From Vitrella brassicaformis CCMP3155 (lineage: Eukaryota; Protista; Chromerida): 15,173 nt of DNA. The position numbers and the translations under genes are program-made. How positions within the stretch are numbered: position 1 is the first letter of the stretch; every line of letters starts with the position of its first letter. Positions 1 to 12,448 of the stretch are shown here, piece by piece. The DNA is taken from contig CDMY01000855.1 of assembly GCA_001179505.1 (NCBI GenBank), positions 1 through 15,173 of the forward strand. Reading direction: 5' to 3'. The notes below the pieces were generated by a model that was given only the letters and a program-made list of their open reading frames with translations, made no database searches and was not told the origin of the DNA.

Positions 1-2650
1 ACCGCCCCTCCCTCTCACGGTCCCGCCCAGAGTTCTACTGGCTGCCCTCAAGACGACGCCGCGAGGTTCCGCAGCCGGCCCCACGGGATGGCGGTATGAG
101 CATCTTCGTGCCTGCATGGGAGAGGGTGACGCCTCGGCAGAAGACGAGACCGTCCCCCTGCCCTCCCTTGTCAGCCGGATGCTCGCTGGTAACATGCCGG
201 ACAGCTGCACTACAACTCTTTCGGCCGCCCGCCTTTTCGCTCTGATGAAAGACAACGGTGGTGTCCGGCCGATTGCTGTGGGTGATGTGCTTTGGAGATG
301 GGTGACGAAGGCAGTTTGTATGGAGAACAAGTTGGCCTTTGAGGAGGACTTCTCGCCTCTACAGTTTGCGGTTGGTACGTCGGCAGGCGGAGAAAAGATT
401 TTCCGGGCCTATCAGACCTACATGGAGACACGCCGCGATGACTCCGATAAATGGGTTTTGGTGACTTTGGACTGCAAGAACGCCTTCAACAGCATCGACC
501 GTCAGGATCCTTGAACTCGGCACAAAGTGGCCGTCCTTTGTCGATTTCTTCTGGCAGTTCTACGGCACCCCGGCTGAACTATGGTATCGCATGAAGGACG
601 GAGGCACAGAGACCATCCTCAGTCAGGAGGGCACTCAACAAGGCGACACGGCGGGCCCTTTACTCTTCTGCCTGGGCCTCCACCCCGCTCTCGTCAAACT
701 GCAAGAGGAGTTCCCCGACGACTTCGTTAGTGCGTTTATGGACGACATCGATAGTGGATTGGACGAGACACGTGTGACGGGGTATGTGGACAGGGCTGAG
801 CAGCTTCTGTCCGAGAAGAAGTTGAGGCTGCGGAGAGACAAGAGTGCTGCATGGAGCTGCTGCTGGCAACAAGACTCCGACATCCCGGCGGACATTGCCG
901 CTTCCGGCGTTGAGTGCTCCACTGAAGGCATCACTGTCCTCGGCTGCCCGCTTGGCGGCAACTCTTTCATCCAGCACAGCCTCGATAAGATCACCACCAG
1001 CCACCAGCCGCTGCTCGAGGCAATCGTGACTTTTGCCCAGAAGGGACTGCAGGGCTTGGGCCTTCTTCTCCGCTATTGTGCATCCCCTCGGCTGAACTAT
1101 TGGCTGCGCCTCCTTCCTCCAAAACCCGGCGTCTCCCTGGCAGCCGCCGAGCGACATGACGCCGCCATTATCATGGCATTCAGGCGCATGTTCCGCTTTC
1201 CCGGCGACTTCCCCGACTCGGTTTCCGCACAGGTGCAGCTGCCCATTCGATTGGGAGGATTTGGCCTTGTTTCTGCATCCACGATTGCCCGTGCAGCTTT
1301 TCTGGGCTCGATCGGTGTGACGGCATCTGACGTCTCTAGCCGGTTCCGAGGAGCACCATGGATGCCTCAAGGTGGGCCTGCTGCTCTTCTGTATCTACCC
1401 TGGCTTCAAGCTGCAGTCCCCGCCCTCGCTGCCATCTCTGAGATGGTCGCACCCTCCTTTTCCCTCCCCTCCCTTGAGGACCTTGTCTCGAGGCCGCAGG
1501 TCCGACTGCAGCAGCGCCTGACCGATCAGCTGCACAAGTTCCGCTTCAACGAGCTCTTCAACTCCCTCCCGCCCGACGGCAGAGCCCGCGCCCGTCTCTT
1601 GAGCTGCCAAGGGCCTCTCTCGTCCGGTCGGTTGTCTGCAATCCCTTCCAGTGACACCAAGGTGCTGAACAACTTCCAGTATCGTCATGCTGTCGCCGGA
1701 TGTCTCGGCATTGCCCTCCCACACGCAACAGTCTCGCAGCGATGCATCTGCGGTGGGGAGGTTGACAAGTTTGGCGGTCACTACTACGTCTGCCACACCG
1801 GCCGTGAGCGGGTCACGAGACACAACAATATGCGCAACTTGTTTATTCGCATCTTTGCTGAGGCAGATGTGCCCTCCAATATGAAGGTACCTCTGCACAG
1901 CCTCGGCATCACCCCGCCCGACGACAACCCCAACAGCCAGCGGATAGACATCTACTGTGTGATCGACGGCAGTGATTACTTGCTCGATGTCACCATCGCC
2001 CACCCATGCCGCCCTGACGATTCGCCCATCCCCTTTCACAGGACACTCAATCGGCGCAGCGCACAACTTCCAGGTGGCAAGACAGCTCAGCTTGCGGAGA
2101 AAGACAAGATCGACAAGTATGGTCCAAGCGCCTAAGCAGCTGGCTTCTGCTTTGTGCCTCTCGCCGCGGAGACATTCGGCAGATGGGGAGAGAAAACGAT
2201 GGACTTTCTCAAGATGCTCGCCAAACGAAAGCCCCGCCCTACCTCCATCCCCACCGATGAGAACGCAGCTTTCCGAGAGAGCGTCATCAACCATTGGAGC
2301 CAGCTCCTGTCCGTCGAGCTGATGAAGCACAACGCGTTTCAAGTGGCGAGTCGTGCACAACGCGCTGCAGCTGCCAGAGGGCCACAGAGGGCCAGCGCGT
2401 TTCCTGAATACTTCATCAGCCGCGGGCCGTATAGGCCACACACCAACCCCGCTTCGGGGCTGTGAGGTGGCTGGCTGGTTCTGGATGTGGTGTGTATGTG
2501 CGTGTTTCTGTATGTCTATTGTGGTGCATGCCTCGCGCTTGTTTGCAGTGTGCGACATGCATTTGTTTGCAGTCAATGAGCGTTGTTCATTGGGTTGTGT
2601 CCCCCTTTGTTTGTTTGATACGAATTGATGCTTAGACGAACTTCGTCGCC
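1..2650 (+). mobile_element. Non-LTR retrotransposon copy 1 (RT + CCHC + restriction-like endonuclease; CRE/SLACS-like organisation); 5' end lies outside the window
   Basis: Frame open from base 2 gives RGSAAGPTGWRYEHLR (RT domain 0), VRPIAVGDVLWR, VTLDCKNAFNSIDR, GTQQGDTAGPLLFCL and SAFMDD. These are followed by CICGGEVDKFGGHYYVC (CCHC), RHNNMRNLF and RIDI...YLLDVTIAHP...AEKDKIDKY (RLE). The 3' UTR (2466-2650) is shared with copy 3. Confidence 0.93.
2..2465 (+). pseudogene. Disrupted RT-RLE polyprotein ORF of retrotransposon copy 1
   Basis: Frameshift at about 505-507 (SIDRQ / ILELGTKW...). In-frame TAA at 2133-2135 where copy 3 has CAA (Gln). The frame resumes AAGFCFVPLAAETFGRWGEK and ends at TGA 2463-2465. 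Confidence 0.9.
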
Positions 2651-8231: not shown

Positions 8232-8742
8232 CTGTGTGGTGAATGCACCTACGTACCCCACTTGACGCTTTTCTCACAACGTCAGCAGAATGGAAAGGCG
8301 TAGCGACCTCTGCTCCACAGCTGGCCTGAGCCGGGTGGGACCGCGGAGACTCCCAGCGCCTGAGGCTGCATGGCCACCCCTGCAGCGAGACAGCCAGTCT
8401 CAACGATCGTCTCTCCGCCTGACCGCATATGTGAAGACACAGAAATGGGTTCATCGGCCGGAGCGACGGTTGAAAGCAGCGAAACAGAGGCAAGAGCATG
8501 CATACATGTACCTCTGCACATGTGCATTTGAATATGTGGATGTTTCGGTACAGGGGTGCACTTGTTTGATGCGACATTCCGTTGATCTTTCCTCAATAAT
8601 GTTTTCTTCTTGGATGGGTGTCTCCATTCTCACACAGACACCCACATGACATATCCCGTCACACGTCGCAAGCTCGCGTCCTCGCTCAACTCGTCTCTCC
8701 CTTGCCATTTGAATCCACCTCTCCTCACTATTTGAATCTTAC

Positions 8743-9183
8743 TGTCTTCTCCAACTGTGCGTGTGCCCCCATCGGACTTCCTGTGAGGTTTTCTGTGGGT
8801 GAATCGCCCGATGGTGAGTCGCCATCGGGCGCGGATGATGGACCAGGATGTCCACCCTTCTGGCTGACAGCGAGGCTCTCGTACGGCTCCAGGGGGACAT
8901 TGATGTCTCCGTATGGTTTTGCACGACTCCCACCGAGAGACGCATCGATGTCCGCAAACTGGTCCCTTCTGCGGTCTGGAATCCGTGTGCCGCTGCCGTA
9001 GCCCGGCCTTCGCTGCCGCTGCAGCTGGGCGCGCATGCTCGAGGGACTGATGGATGAACATGTAACAGAGGAGACAGGCGCAAGTACAGCAGAGGCTGGA
9101 TCCATCTAGTGTATACCTGAGAGCGAATGACATGCCCACAACGTTGGTCCAGAATCGTTCTCGCATGAAGATGTCCGCTGACG
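8743..9183 (-). other. Putative downstream exons (9183-9117, 9046-8743) extending the tubulin-like gene C-terminally
   Basis: GT-AG introns of 102 and 70 nt are phase-consistent. Product is SSADIFMRERFWTNVVGMSFALSPSSMRAQLQRQRRPG..., Ser/Pro/Gly-rich. Confidence 0.45.
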
Positions 9184-9285
9184 CTGCAGACATATGGTAG
9201 ACACACACCGCACACCATACACAGGGAGAGCTTGTGCCCTGGTGAGGCTGGAGAGGTGTTCGCTCATGCATCCATTCATTCGTAC

Positions 9286-11157
9286 ATGCTCCCGGGATAA
9301 AGACCTCTTTTACCACGTCTAGCCACTTGCGTATCTGCATTTGATCCTCCTTGGTGGCCTCGTCTTTCTCCACCTTGTCAGGGAAGGCTCCCCATTCTCG
9401 GTACCGACTCAACAGATCCTTGAGCGTCTCACGAGCCCATCTGCACAAATGAACAGTGCAACCCATCCCTCCCCCCCCCCCCTGTCCTCATGTTGTATGT
9501 ATACCTCTTCGATCTCCATTCCTTCTGCCTCGTATATGTATAGGTGCGCCTTGGCCTTGTACAGTTTGTCCCACGCGTCCCCTATGCGTTCGAGCACCTC
9601 ATGGAAGGCCGTGCAGTTGGTGATGTACGTCACTGACTGATCGAACTGCTTGCCGGCGGGCGGCACCGTGCATATACACGAGCTGAGGCAGGTGGGGGTC
9701 CAGTCGGGGAAGTGCGCGTCGTACACGGTGGTGTGTGGCATCCTTTGCAGCACATCGTTGATTTCGGACGTGGCCAGGTACTCCGTCTTGCCGCGAAAGG
9801 TCGCAAACGATGGCAGGAACCGAGACGTGCGCCAATGCTCCTGAGGACACAAACAAGACGGCGCCTTCCTGATCCCCTATTGTGTGTGAGCTGCATTCAT
9901 TGCGTGCGATATGACCCCTGTGTCGAGCCTGAGAGTGTCGCACTTGACGACACAGTTCTCGGGCTGCAGCATCTGCTGTGTGAGTTCCAAGATGGAGTAC
10001 GTGCGATAGGGAGCCGTCTTCGTCAACGACAGGGGAGCCGTGCCTACGCCGACACGCACACGAAAAACCGGGAAGGATGTTGTATGTGAGATACGCATGC
10101 GCTTCCCCTCCGACATACACGTGATCAGAAAGTGTGTCTTTGGGAACGGCACCAGGTTGGTGTGCATTTTGCGGAGGTCTGCGTCGACGATACCTGGGAA
10201 CCTCAAGTTACACGTGATGCCGCTCATGACGCGGGCGACCAGGTCATCCATGTGCTGGAAGCGGGGCACGTTGATCTGCAGTATCTGCTGGCATATGCTG
10301 CTCAACGCATGGTTGTCAAACGGAAACACCTAATCGATCAAAATTCGTTCACATGCACAGGCAGACAAAGGGGTGTGCCGTGCCGCGTGTGTAGGTGTGT
10401 GTGCACCTGATCGCAGCACTCAACGAGACCTTTGAGCCCCAGTACGGCATTGTATGGCTCCACGAGTATGTCTGATGCGAGCTCGCTGGTGAAGAGGGTG
10501 AATGTTTGCAGGACAGGTCCCAGCAGCCCAGAGGTCTTGTTGAAGAAGTCTTGCATGGAGTTGAGCATGAGGGTGGTCAGCCCCGACCCCGTCCCGCCCG
10601 CAAGGGAGTGAGCGAGCTGCACACCCTGTAGACAATCGCATCCCTCTACCATCCGACGCACCTGAAATGTGATAAGCCAACGTGCGCGAGCGTTCCCTCT
10701 ATGCTATTTTTGCTCACTCCCTCCGTCATTGCGTCGCAGATGTCGAGCCCAGATGTGTGGTAGGCCCTGGCGTAGCAGTTGCCGCTGCCCTCGTCAGGTA
10801 AAAGATATTCTCTGGTCTGTAGAGCCTGCCAAGTTCTGTGGTCATCAGATTGTCAATGAACATCTTGTCAAGCTCCACAAGAATTTAGCGAGGCACATAT
10901 CTGGATGCAGATGGCATAAATCTATACGCACGTGCAAGTGGCTTGATCGCTCCGTGTCTGTCCTGCCTGCCGCTGGAGGATTCGTCGAAGAAGACGCCCA
11001 CTTGCTGCAGTCGATATATGTCCGCCTCGCTGCCGCAGAACTTGCCGTGGAGCGTCCCCATTGTCTTCTCGAAGTTCTGGTGGTGAATGTGATGCTCCTC
11101 CACCAAATCGCGCCAAAACTCTTGCGAAATGTTGTTGCCGGCACGACCAACTTGCAC
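9286..11157 (-). pseudogene. Highly divergent beta-like tubulin gene, disrupted; exons 11157-10967, 10900-10718, 10661-10407, 10329-10119, 10043-9916, 9840-9505, 9440-9286
   Basis: Tubulin motifs in colinear order: VQVGRAGNNISQEFW, YVPR*ILVELD, YRPEN, GSGNCYARA, VRRMVEGCDCLQG, HSLAGGTGSG (signature), VEPYNA, FDNHAL, MSGITCNLRFPG..DLRKM..NLVPFP, APL, FRG, DWTP, TNCTAF, LYKAKAHLYIYEAEGME, LKDLLSRY. Lesions: TAA at 10887-10885, 1-nt deletion at about 10798, and a phase conflict at the 9504/9441 intron. Confidence 0.92.
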
Positions 11158-11233
11158 CTACACGAGCACAGAAACCATGCCGTCTACGTTGCCTTTGTGC
11201 ACTCATAGGACGCCGCCTTCATGTATCACTCAC

Positions 11234-11980
11234 CATGTCACCGGCCACATGTATGTAGCCATCTATGTTCACCATGACATCAAGGAAACAAGGGGCTTCA
11301 GGAAAGTTTCCCAGCAACTCATCAAGGAGGGCCTCCCGTACCTCTATCGACCTCCTGCATGGATGGGGTCGAAGCACCAACCATCCAGACACATAACACA
11401 ACACACACACGGGTGTTGTCCATTCTATGTCTCCGTCCTTTTCCCTTGCCATTTGCATCTCATGGTGCCCATCCGGCTTCATCCTGGTAGAGACCGTGTA
11501 TTTATGTATACAGCAAGACGGTTGATGTTTGCTTGCCTGCTCTAGACCATTCTCTTATCAGATCGGCACACAGCTCACCAGTAGTCCTCGGCATACTTCT
11601 GTGAATCGCCGGCGATATGTTCTACGAAGGCCTCGGTTACCTTGACGCCTTTCCACTTGCCGTCAATGTTGGTCATTTTCACCTACACAACGACGTGAAC
11701 ACGCAGTATTCGGATGGATTAATTCCTATGTTAAGTGACCATCTTCGGTCGGGCCTTTCCATCGTGGTCACGCAAAATAAGAGAGTAGACAGCCTCACTT
11801 TCTCCTTTGAAGTAGCTCACAGTTCCCTTGGACCTGATTGGCTAGGAAAAACCGGAGAATGACTGACGTTGAAGAATCAGTGATATATACACATGAAAGC
11901 CTCACTCACGCGATATAGCTATATCCGGGGTGCATGTTTGGTTTCGGACTACCAGGATGGATTTCGGTGGACCACAAGTC
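11234..11980 (-). other. Putative upstream exons (11980-11910, 11833-11740, 11682-11579, 11483-11409, 11354-11234) splicing in frame into the tubulin domain
   Basis: Five stop-free exons total 465 nt (155 codons), joined by GT-AG introns of 76, 57, 95, 54 and 76 nt with matching phases. Strong donors GTGAGT at 11909 and 11233 and GTGAGC at 11578. Confidence 0.5.
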
Positions 11981-12179
11981 CTGCATACACGGACACGCGA
12001 GCAGGAATGTATGAACATATGTACATACCTGCATGCATATTCTTTCCGTGGCTTAGTATGTATCGAAGGTGAACGATCTATCTCTCTTCCGCCAAATAGT
12101 AAGGTGTTGTGTCTTGTGGAAGTCCGGCGATGTCTCGAATGTCTGCGATTACACGAATCGTAGACGCACACATCATCAA

Positions 12180-12227
12180 GACAAGACGGTTGCAGAGTCA
12201 CCTGACAAGACGGTGGCAGAGTCACCT
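12180..12227 (+). repeat. 24-bp tandem duplication
   Basis: GACAAGACGGT(T/G)GCAGAGTCACCT twice. Confidence 0.9.
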
Positions 12228-12448
12228 GCGGTGGTGAGCCGACGGTTGTACACCCGCACATCGTCATTTTTTGCACTATCCATTTGCTCCAAGTTGAACC
12301 CATTCCAAGGCCGACTAGGCGGCTCTTCGTCGGCGTGGCCACGCAAACGCCCATCTCTGGACACACATACATATGCATCGCGGGAGAGACAATAGGATAG
12401 GCATGAAGTCAGGCAGCCAGGCAATGTGAATATGATTGATTAGAACAC

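What the first reader, a model, noticed from the sequence alone, without database searches (positions are those of the whole stretch)
9286..11157. Highly divergent beta-like tubulin with mixed subfamily signatures
It has beta-type DLRKM (Lys rather than the alpha catalytic Glu254) and CDCLQG. It also has gamma/delta-like AGGTGSG, an alpha-like YAR in the T3 loop (GSGNCYARA vs GAGNNWAKG), and insertions in the H1-S2 region (HHIHHQNFEKTMGTLHG) and before S8 (LRLDTGEHWRTS). Known: alpha and beta tubulins are among the most conserved eukaryotic proteins, so divergence this deep suggests an unassigned lineage-specific tubulin class. Splice sites and motifs are largely intact despite two or three lesions, so the loss is recent, allelic or an assembly error, and intact relatives may exist.
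Basis: partly seen in the sequence, partly recalled or inferred. Interest (0 to 1): 0.7.

Follow-up and report, generated by a model that had tools for sequence, protein, structure and literature searches.

The report
Broken copy of divergent beta-like tubulin
This is a transcribed but broken duplicate of an intact, unusual beta-like tubulin gene of the alga Vitrella brassicaformis. The broken copy is ordinary, but it belongs to a so far unnamed tubulin family shared by dinoflagellates, perkinsids, chromerids and at least one early apicomplexan.

Summary
A multi-exon tubulin gene lies on the minus strand (about 11275 to at least 8622). It carries the quoted motifs, an in-frame TAA (10887-10885) and a 1-nt frameshift (10798/10797).

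The genome is Vitrella brassicaformis CCMP3155, and the window is a whole 15,173-base scaffold.

An intact, expressed paralog lies on another contig (G000:C149, protein P0001, 784 aa). Against it the window copy also shows:
- a 5-nt deletion that gives a TGA right after ...EEMGS
- a degraded GC-AG donor
- a shifted donor
- two missing introns

Contigs from two other sequencing studies reproduce the window across both lesions without a difference. A marine sediment metagenome does so across the frameshift. These are therefore not assembly errors. A spliced transcript contig covers exons 6 to 9, so the locus is transcribed.

dN/dS against the paralog is 0.12 (dS 0.78), so the decay is recent.

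The gene is not a decayed canonical beta-tubulin. Both copies belong to a well-supported clade of beta-like tubulins found across Myzozoa: Perkinsus, Oxyrrhis, Amoebophrya, core dinoflagellates, Chromera and Digyalum. Databases auto-name them 'tubulin beta', and I found no description of the family. Whether the clade is an old sister of beta or a fast myzozoan duplicate is unresolved.

The parts
11234..11275 (-). Exon-1 piece (MVNIDGYIHV AGDM), followed by a GTGAGT donor. It has 15 extra nt before the donor compared with the paralog, and DGY where the family has the conserved REI.
   Evidence: annotated model P0002
11158..11233 (-). Intron 1 (GTGAGT...TAG).
   Evidence: the position matches the paralog's intron after ...IIH
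10718..11157 (-). Exon 2, covering the T1 loop to H3. It holds all of the 5' lesions.
11138..11139 (-). Site where the paralog has an intron (after VQVGRA|G, which holds the C149 assembly gap). The window has none here.
10901..10966 (-). Remnant of the paralog's GC-AG intron. The donor GCAAGT has become GCAGGA. If unspliced, it reads through in frame and adds about 22 residues to the H1-S2 loop.
   Evidence: P0001 reads ...SSGRYVPR...
10885..10887 (-). In-frame TAA where the paralog has TCG (Ser), in YVPR-S-ILVDLD.
   Evidence: X1 and X3 contigs cover it with 0 differences
10811..10812 (-). Site where the paralog has a 53-nt intron (LYRP|ENMFY). The intron is precisely absent here.
10797..10798 (-). 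1-nt deletion (paralog TAC ACT GAC; window TAC -CT GAC), causing a frameshift.
   Evidence: an identical 97-nt contig spanning 10768-10864 in X1, X3 and metagenome X11
10662..10717 (-). Intron (GTGAGC...CAG, 56 nt).
10407..10661 (-). Exon 3 (CDCLQG, AGGTGSG, T5 loop).
10119..10329 (-). Exon 4 (H7, and the T7 loop DLRKM with beta-type Lys).
9916..10043 (-). Exon 5 (ELTQQM, and the start of the pre-S8 insertion).
9505..9840 (-). Exon 6 (Tubulin_C part, ending GMEIEE).
   Evidence: the RNA contig lies on 9505-9798
9441..9504 (-). Intron, shown to be spliced out in RNA.
   Evidence: joint 9440/9505 in X13
9314..9440 (-). Exon 7 as spliced in RNA. A 5-nt deletion after ATG gives TGA at 9431-9429. 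The donor used (GTG|GTAAAA) lies 28 nt upstream of the ancestral donor at 9286/9285.
9117..9183 (-). Exon 8 (C-terminal extension, SADIFMR...TNVVG.SFAL), conserved with the paralog.
8622..9046 (-). Exon 9 and onward (C-terminal extension and/or 3' UTR), covered by transcript contigs.
   Evidence: DNA similarity to C149

Best explanation
The locus is a non-processed, still transcribed pseudogene. It is a duplicate of the intact Vitrella gene on contig C149 (P0001, CEL93227.1). It stayed under purifying selection for most of the time since the duplication and was disabled recently.

The disabling changes are:
- a stop codon and a 1-nt deletion in exon 2
- a 5-nt deletion in exon 7
- a degraded GC-AG splice donor
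- a shifted donor in exon 7

Both copies belong to a Myzozoa-wide family of beta-derived tubulins. Family features:
- a full tubulin fold and intact GTP-binding loops
- a beta-type Lys in the T7 loop
- a T3 loop reading GSGNCYA(K/R)A
- insertions in the H1-S2 loop and before S8
- a conserved non-acidic C-terminal helix in place of the acidic tail

Inferred, not shown: intact members act as the beta-like (non-catalytic) subunit of a specialised tubulin dimer or polymer. The window copy itself makes no working tubulin.
For: Paralog and lesions:
- The exon pieces match C149 at 73-83% amino-acid identity.
- The DNA alignment shows each lesion against an intact counterpart.

Reads:
- X1 and X3, from different studies, and marine metagenome X11 reproduce the window exactly across the frameshift.
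- X1 and X3 also reproduce it across the TAA.

Expression:
- A 541-nt contig of X13 joins 9798-9505, 9440-9314, 9183-9117 and 9046-8994 over GT..AG introns.
- That splicing puts TGA in frame after EEMGS.
- P0001 is identical to an MMETSP transcript ORF, so the intact copy is expressed. The annotated window model P0002 has no such support.

Selection:
- dN 0.096, dS 0.78, omega 0.12.
- At sites conserved in at least 9 of 12 outgroups, the window copy has 12 derived changes and the paralog none.
- Tree end branches are 0.27-0.28 for the window model and 0 for the paralog.

Family:
- Relatives score 400-500 bits, against about 355 bits for canonical beta.
- Taxa were identified.
- The clade has SH-aLRT support of 100.

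Fold:
- The AlphaFold2 model of the paralog's domain has pLDDT 90 and pTM 0.92.
- Its best matches are beta chains, at target TM 0.97 and rmsd 1.4-1.8 A.
- The sequence alignment covers beta residues 2-426.
Against: - The annotated model P0002 is an open 531-aa frame. It avoids the TAA and the frameshift with a GC-AG intron (about 10966 to 10836). I have no RNA data over 9799-11300 to exclude that splice.
- An omega of 0.12 is also what a still-functional gene would show.
- The overall relative-rate count (17 versus 10) is not significant.
- The tool only guesses that X13 is RNA. The spliced joints are my reason for reading it as RNA.
- The function of the family is entirely inferred.
Confidence: 0.8

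Rival explanations
1. The locus is a working gene that encodes the annotated 531-aa protein (P0002). An alternative GC-AG intron skips the stop and the frameshift, giving a tubulin-like protein that lacks S2-H2 and most of H12 and has taken on a new role.
For: - P0002 is an uninterrupted frame in the public annotation.
- The locus is transcribed and spliced.
- Omega is 0.12.
Against: - The skipped stretch encodes sequence that is clearly conserved with the paralog (YVPR..ILV.LDKMFIDNLMTT). In the model it is replaced by 13 out-of-frame residues.
- The model would lack a core strand and the T2 loop.
- The model ends at a stop created by a 5-nt deletion.
- The copy has 12 derived changes at highly conserved family sites, against 0 in the paralog.
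- No transcript-derived ORF of at least 292 aa matches the model.
Confidence: 0.12
2. The gene is intact, and the lesions are sequencing or assembly errors or a rare allele.
For: The frameshift sits next to a TTTT run, and the scaffold is small and unplaced.
Against: - Contigs of X1 and X3 (two studies) are identical across both lesions. Metagenome X11 is identical across the frameshift. No variant letters were reported.
- There are at least five independent defects, including a 5-nt deletion that is also seen in a transcript contig.
Confidence: 0.03
3. It is a neutrally decayed copy of an ordinary beta-tubulin gene, and its odd motifs are decay.
For: The best solved-structure matches are beta-tubulins.
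Against: - The odd motifs and insertions are shared with an intact expressed paralog and with about 60 relatives in other myzozoans.
- Vitrella's canonical beta genes are elsewhere, on C553 and C448.
- Omega is 0.12, not near 1.
- The family clade excludes canonical beta with support of 100.
Confidence: 0.01

Closest known systems
Canonical beta-tubulin
   Same: - End-to-end alignable with beta residues 2-426, at 351 bits.
- Same fold, at target TM 0.97.
- T7 loop NADLRK with Lys instead of the alpha catalytic Glu.
- CDCLQG, GGTGSG-type T4 loop and ELTQQM are present.
- Nearest canonical class in the trees.
   Different: - Only about 40% identity, whereas the canonical betas sampled here sit on very short tree branches.
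- The T3 loop reads GSGNCYA(K/R)A instead of GAGNNWAKG.
- Extra residues in the H1-S2 loop, after H4 and before S8.
- No acidic tail. A conserved non-acidic helix takes its place.
- The Vitrella paralog adds about 165 N-terminal and about 150 C-terminal residues.
Divergent beta-like tubulins of ciliates and Naegleria (Paramecium 'theta'/'iota', Tetrahymena beta-like genes)
   Same: These are long-branch tubulins that trees place at the base of beta. Findeisen et al. 2014 (PMC4202323) folded them into beta. They are also alveolate-centred.
   Different: I had no ciliate or Naegleria sequences on hand, so any relationship is untested. No ciliate names appear among the close relatives listed.
Duplicated (non-processed) pseudogenes that remain transcribed
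   Same: - Premature stop, frameshifts and splice-site decay.
- An intact paralog exists.
- Most introns are retained.
- The mRNA is still made and spliced.
   Different: Two of the paralog's introns are absent here. This could be reverse-transcriptase-mediated intron loss in this copy or intron gain in the paralog. There is no outgroup gene structure to decide.

Membership tests
Tubulin superfamily (eukaryotic tubulins) | Tubulin/FtsZ GTPase domain plus tubulin C-terminal domain | tested here: met
   PF00091 and PF03953 match the exon pieces and are on record for P0001 and P0002. The AlphaFold2 model has pLDDT 90 and matches solved tubulin chains at target TM 0.97.
Canonical beta-tubulin | T7 loop with Lys at the position of the alpha catalytic Glu254 | tested here: met
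   DLRKM in window exon 4. NADLRK is nearly invariant in the family.
Canonical beta-tubulin | Falls inside the clade of canonical beta sequences | tested here: inconclusive
   Free trees place the family as sister to canonical beta (family 100, canonical beta 89). The AU test does not reject holding it together with apicomplexan canonical beta (p 0.58).
Canonical beta-tubulin | Acidic C-terminal tail and a GAGNNWAKG T3 loop | tested here: not met
   The tail is non-acidic and conserved within the family. The T3 loop reads GSGNCYA(K/R)A.
Alpha-tubulin | Catalytic Glu in T7; best matches are alpha | tested here: not met
   T7 carries Lys. All 60 best solved-structure matches are beta chains.
Gamma, delta, epsilon, zeta tubulins | Closer to one of these classes than to alpha or beta | tested here: not met
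   Within the genome, the exon pieces match only the paralog, the two beta loci (C553, C448) and the two alpha loci (C323, C256). They do not match the gamma-like (C373), delta-like (C113) or epsilon-like (C640, C781) loci. No tree with these classes was built.
Ciliate/Naegleria divergent beta group ('theta', 'iota') | Groups with those sequences in a tree | not tested
   No such sequences were retrieved. The group is known to me only from PMC4202323.
Pseudogene (duplicated, non-processed) | Disabling lesions that are real in the DNA, with an intact paralog elsewhere | tested here: met
   The TAA, the 1-nt deletion and the 5-nt deletion are each seen against an intact C149 counterpart. Independent contigs agree with the window.
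Pseudogene (duplicated, non-processed) | Relaxed constraint compared with the functional copy | tested here: inconclusive
   Omega is 0.12 overall. The derived changes at highly conserved sites are 12 versus 0, but the overall count of 17 versus 10 is not significant.
Processed (retro-copied) pseudogene | No introns; a cDNA-like copy | tested here: not met
   At least seven introns are retained at the paralog's positions. Only two are missing.

The most novel reading that the evidence does not exclude
The intact relatives of this broken gene form an undescribed, functionally distinct tubulin class of Myzozoa. It would have been present in the common ancestor of dinoflagellates, perkinsids, chromerids and apicomplexans, and lost in the well-studied parasites. 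It could pair with a matching divergent alpha-like tubulin (Vitrella contig C1045) to build a specialised structure, such as part of the flagellar or apical apparatus.
Probability: 0.3. Interest if true: 0.7.

Novelty: new variant of a known kind. Interest (0 to 1): 0.42.

Why it matters
The window gene itself matters mainly as an annotation correction. The public model CEM35466.1 / A0A0G4GWU6 ('Tubulin beta chain', 531 aa) is built around a stop codon and a frameshift and should be treated as a pseudogene.

The wider point is the family. It is a conserved, expressed, beta-derived tubulin with a replaced C-terminal tail, and it is spread across Myzozoa while hidden under the automatic name 'tubulin beta'.

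Tubulin tails carry the modifications that motors and microtubule-binding proteins read. A conserved non-acidic tail therefore suggests a polymer with different partners.

Some hosts of the family (Perkinsus, Chromera) can be transfected, so localisation and knock-out are feasible. The family's absence from the listed Cryptosporidium hits, and apparently from other model apicomplexans, would tie it to structures lost during the move to parasitism.

Tried and rejected
- **Alternative genetic code for the TAA.** Rejected. It is the only in-frame stop in the conserved frame, and the paralog has a Ser codon there.
- **A small intron removing only the TAA or the frameshift.** No GT..AG or GC..AG pair fits without deleting conserved coding sequence.
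- **Assembly error.** Rejected.
- **Earlier scan notes near this place.** None found.
- **Transcript-derived ORFs of the window copy.** The word search with P0002 returned only P0002 and P0001 above 50% identity. ORFs shorter than 292 aa would not have been seen.
- **AU test on the 103-row set.** It did not finish in 864 s. I replaced it with a 40-row set.
- **'Careful' tree search on the 40-row set.** It did not finish. The trees reported are 'quick' trees with SH-aLRT support only.
- **Literature.** Four searches and three papers read gave no description of the family. The held library is not complete, so this is not proof of novelty.
- **Joined exon model.** Exons were searched by reference, and the database's own models P0001 and P0002 served as full-length proxies.
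- **Complex prediction.** Not used. The alpha-like candidate partner has no unjoined full-length reference.

Full report
**1. What is in the window**

Pfam's Tubulin and Tubulin_C models match pieces of the minus strand between 9412 and 11157. I read the minus strand and compared it with a paralog and with a spliced transcript contig. That gives this gene model:
- an exon-1 piece at 11275-11234
- exon 2 at 11157-10718
- exon 3 at 10661-10407
- exon 4 at 10329-10119
- exon 5 at 10043-9916
- exon 6 at 9840-9505
- exon 7 at 9440-9314
- exon 8 at 9183-9117
- exon 9 from 9046 to at least 8622

The two lesions they located are also real: an in-frame TAA at 10887-10885 and a frame change between 10798 and 10797.

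**2. Organism and annotation**

The assembly has 72.7 Mb in 1,064 contigs. Database records name it Vitrella brassicaformis CCMP3155, and the window is a complete 15,173-base scaffold.

The public model of this gene is P0002 (CEM35466.1 / A0A0G4GWU6, 531 aa, auto-named 'Tubulin beta chain'). It avoids the TAA and the frameshift with a GC-AG intron from about 10966 to about 10836. That splice discards a stretch that is plainly conserved coding sequence and replaces 13 residues with out-of-frame ones. The model ends at ...EEMGS.

**3. The intact paralog and the list of defects**

The exon pieces match a second locus on contig C149 at 73-83% amino-acid identity. That locus encodes P0001 (CEL93227.1, 784 aa). 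P0001 is identical to an ORF of an MMETSP transcript, so it is expressed.

Aligning the two loci shows the following in the window copy:
- (a) TAA where the paralog has TCG (Ser).
- (b) A 1-nt deletion (TAC ACT GAC becomes TAC CT GAC).
- (c) A 5-nt deletion just after the exon-7 acceptor, which puts TGA at 9431-9429.
- (d) The paralog's GC-AG donor GCAAGT changed to GCAGGA. If unspliced, this leaves a 66-nt in-frame remnant (10966-10901).
- (e) Two of the paralog's introns absent: one after VQVGRA|G and one between LYRP and ENMFY.
- (f) 15 extra nucleotides ahead of the intron-1 donor, and DGY in place of the conserved REI at the N-terminus of the tubulin domain.

The N-terminal extension annotated for the window gene is unrelated to the paralog's.

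**4. Are the lesions real, and is the locus expressed?**

I laid four public runs on 8600-11500.
- Contigs of X1 and X3, from different studies and carrying different organism labels, are identical to the window across the TAA and the frameshift.
- A marine sediment metagenome (X11) has the same 97-nt contig across the frameshift.
- No variant letters were reported.
- The contig breaks and doubled depth at 10768-10864 come from words shared with the paralog. A 151-nt contig there carries the paralog's extra 70 nt.

Assembly error is therefore excluded.

A 541-nt contig of X13 joins 9798-9505, 9440-9314, 9183-9117 and 9046-8994. The skipped parts begin with GT and end with AG on the minus strand. 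The DNA-like runs show no such joints. I therefore read this contig as spliced mRNA, although the tool only guesses that X13 is RNA.

This splicing confirms the frame break in exon 7. It also shows that the donor in use lies 28 nt upstream of the ancestral one at 9286/9285. No transcript contig covers 9799-11300, so splicing around the 5' lesions remains unobserved.

**5. Selection**

I used a Nei-Gojobori count, summed exon by exon without building a joined sequence. It gives dN 0.096, dS 0.78 and omega 0.12. The duplication is old, and the window copy was constrained for most of its history.

Polarising the amino-acid differences with 12 family outgroups gives 17 window-derived and 10 paralog-derived changes, which is not significant. 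At sites conserved in at least 9 of 12 outgroups, however, the count is 12 against 0. In the trees the window model has an end branch of 0.27-0.28 and the paralog 0. Part of that difference comes from the out-of-frame residues in P0002.

Together with five or more defects, this fits a recent loss of function, perhaps after a period of relaxed constraint.

**6. What kind of tubulin is it?**

An exhaustive profile search with a paralog piece found the two Vitrella proteins first. Next came a set of proteins scoring clearly better than canonical beta.

A word search with the paralog's tubulin domain lists about 55 proteins at 41-49% identity and about 360-500 bits, ahead of canonical beta at about 355 bits and 40% identity. 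The named sources are:
- Perkinsus marinus and P. chesapeaki
- Oxyrrhis marina
- Amoebophrya
- Symbiodinium pilosum, Effrenium, Gymnodinium smaydae, Ansanella, and Prorocentrum (placed in the family by the tree)
- an unnamed dinoflagellate
- Chromera velia
- the apicomplexan Digyalum oweni
- many marine metagenome ORFs

Where these carry a functional name, it is 'tubulin beta'; many carry none.

Shared features (alignments A1 and A2):
- a T3 loop reading GSGNCYA(K/R)A
- (S/A)GGTGSG
- NADLRKM
- a pre-S8 insertion
- FPDWIPN
- a conserved non-acidic C-terminal helix

Within Vitrella, ordinary genes sit elsewhere:
- beta on C553 and C448
- alpha on C323 and C256
- gamma-like on C373
- delta-like on C113
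- epsilon-like on C640 and C781

The window's exon pieces do not match the gamma-, delta- or epsilon-like loci.

**7. Phylogeny**

With alpha as outgroup, the family is one clade (SH-aLRT 100, stem about 1.0-1.2 changes per site). It sits beside a clade of canonical beta from alveolates, rhizarians, red algae and animals (support 89).

Inside the family, the chromerid and Digyalum sequences branch at the base. Perkinsus, Oxyrrhis, Amoebophrya and the core dinoflagellates then follow in roughly the species order, which argues for vertical descent from the myzozoan ancestor.

The tool warns that long branches meet here. An AU test does not reject a tree in which the family sits with apicomplexan canonical beta (p 0.58; that tree is 3 log units better). 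The data therefore cannot separate 'old sister of beta' from 'fast-evolving myzozoan duplicate of beta'. The restricted distribution makes the second the simpler reading.

These are 'quick' trees; the 'careful' searches did not finish.

**8. Structure**

An AlphaFold2 model of the paralog's tubulin domain, built from the family alignment, is confident (pLDDT 90, pTM 0.92). It superposes on solved beta chains at target TM 0.97 and rmsd 1.4-1.8 A. The sequence aligns with beta residues 2-426.

The nucleotide-binding loops are conserved in the family. GTP binding is therefore likely for intact members. This is an inference.

**9. Likely mechanism**

Shown:
- Intact members are full tubulins.
- Their T7 loop is of the beta type.
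- Their tail is replaced by a non-acidic helix.

Inferred:
- They occupy the beta position of a dimer with an alpha-type partner.
- They build, or join, a specialised polymer whose surface lacks the acidic tail that motors and modifying enzymes use.

A divergent alpha-like tubulin on Vitrella contig C1045 is a candidate partner (all best solved-structure matches are alpha). Neither its distribution nor any pairing was tested.

The window copy cannot make such a protein, whichever way it is spliced.

**10. Comparison with what is known**

The reviews and surveys I could read recognise six classes. They fold the divergent Paramecium, Tetrahymena, Oxytricha and Naegleria tubulins into beta (PMC4202323). 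A survey of apicomplexan tubulins does not mention chromerids or this family (PMC10056924), and a ciliate survey does not mention myzozoans (PMC11321004). Other searches found nothing.

**11. Verdict**

- The window feature is a recently disabled, transcribed duplicate, and its public annotation is misleading.
- The family behind it is a real, widespread and apparently unnamed variant of beta-tubulin. It deserves proper phylogenetic and cell-biological study.

Noticed in passing
L010 (G000:C1045:59216-62557), minus strand: A second divergent tubulin gene of the alpha type. It has an N-terminus with a GQAGVQVG T1 loop, an odd T3 region (KQDSGGTFVQG) and a WGGGTGGG T4 loop. All best solved-structure matches of its 162-aa piece are alpha chains. 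It is a candidate partner for the beta-like family.
   Followed up: partly
window 591-2132 (+): A 514-aa ORF with a partial reverse-transcriptase match (RVT_1, 27.9 bits, just under Pfam's cut-off of 29.6). This looks like a retroelement remnant on the same small scaffold as a gene copy that lacks two of its paralog's introns.
   Followed up: no
window 8600-11500 (runs X11, X12): Marine sediment metagenomes hold near-identical sequence, so a Vitrella-like organism occurs in the environment. X11 differs by a 5-nt insertion (GTGCC) after 10374, inside an intron, and a 1-nt deletion at 8729.
   Followed up: partly
L032 (G000:C149:51402-51701): A 300-N assembly gap lies inside an intron of the intact paralog, between the exon encoding VQVGRA and the one starting GNNIS. 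The annotated protein bridges the gap and agrees with an MMETSP transcript.
   Followed up: partly
proteins P0020, P0133, P0107, P0038: Another set of very long-branch tubulins of unknown origin groups loosely near the base of beta, apart from the myzozoan family. I did not look up their sources.
   Followed up: no
proteins P0153, P0394-P0399: Proteins of 800-900 aa named 'tubulin beta' (Plasmodiophora, Wallemia, Glossina, Gossypium, Acropora) score like two tubulin domains in tandem. They are probably fused gene models of neighbouring tubulin genes.
   Followed up: no
window 9470-9481, minus strand: A run of 12 G sits inside the intron that RNA shows to be spliced out (9504-9441). It has no effect on the coding sequence.
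   Followed up: no
window 11300-12400 versus L032: The N-terminal extension annotated for the window gene shows no similarity to the paralog's roughly 165-residue extension. The duplication may have excluded the 5' end, or the annotation may join a neighbouring gene.
   Followed up: partly
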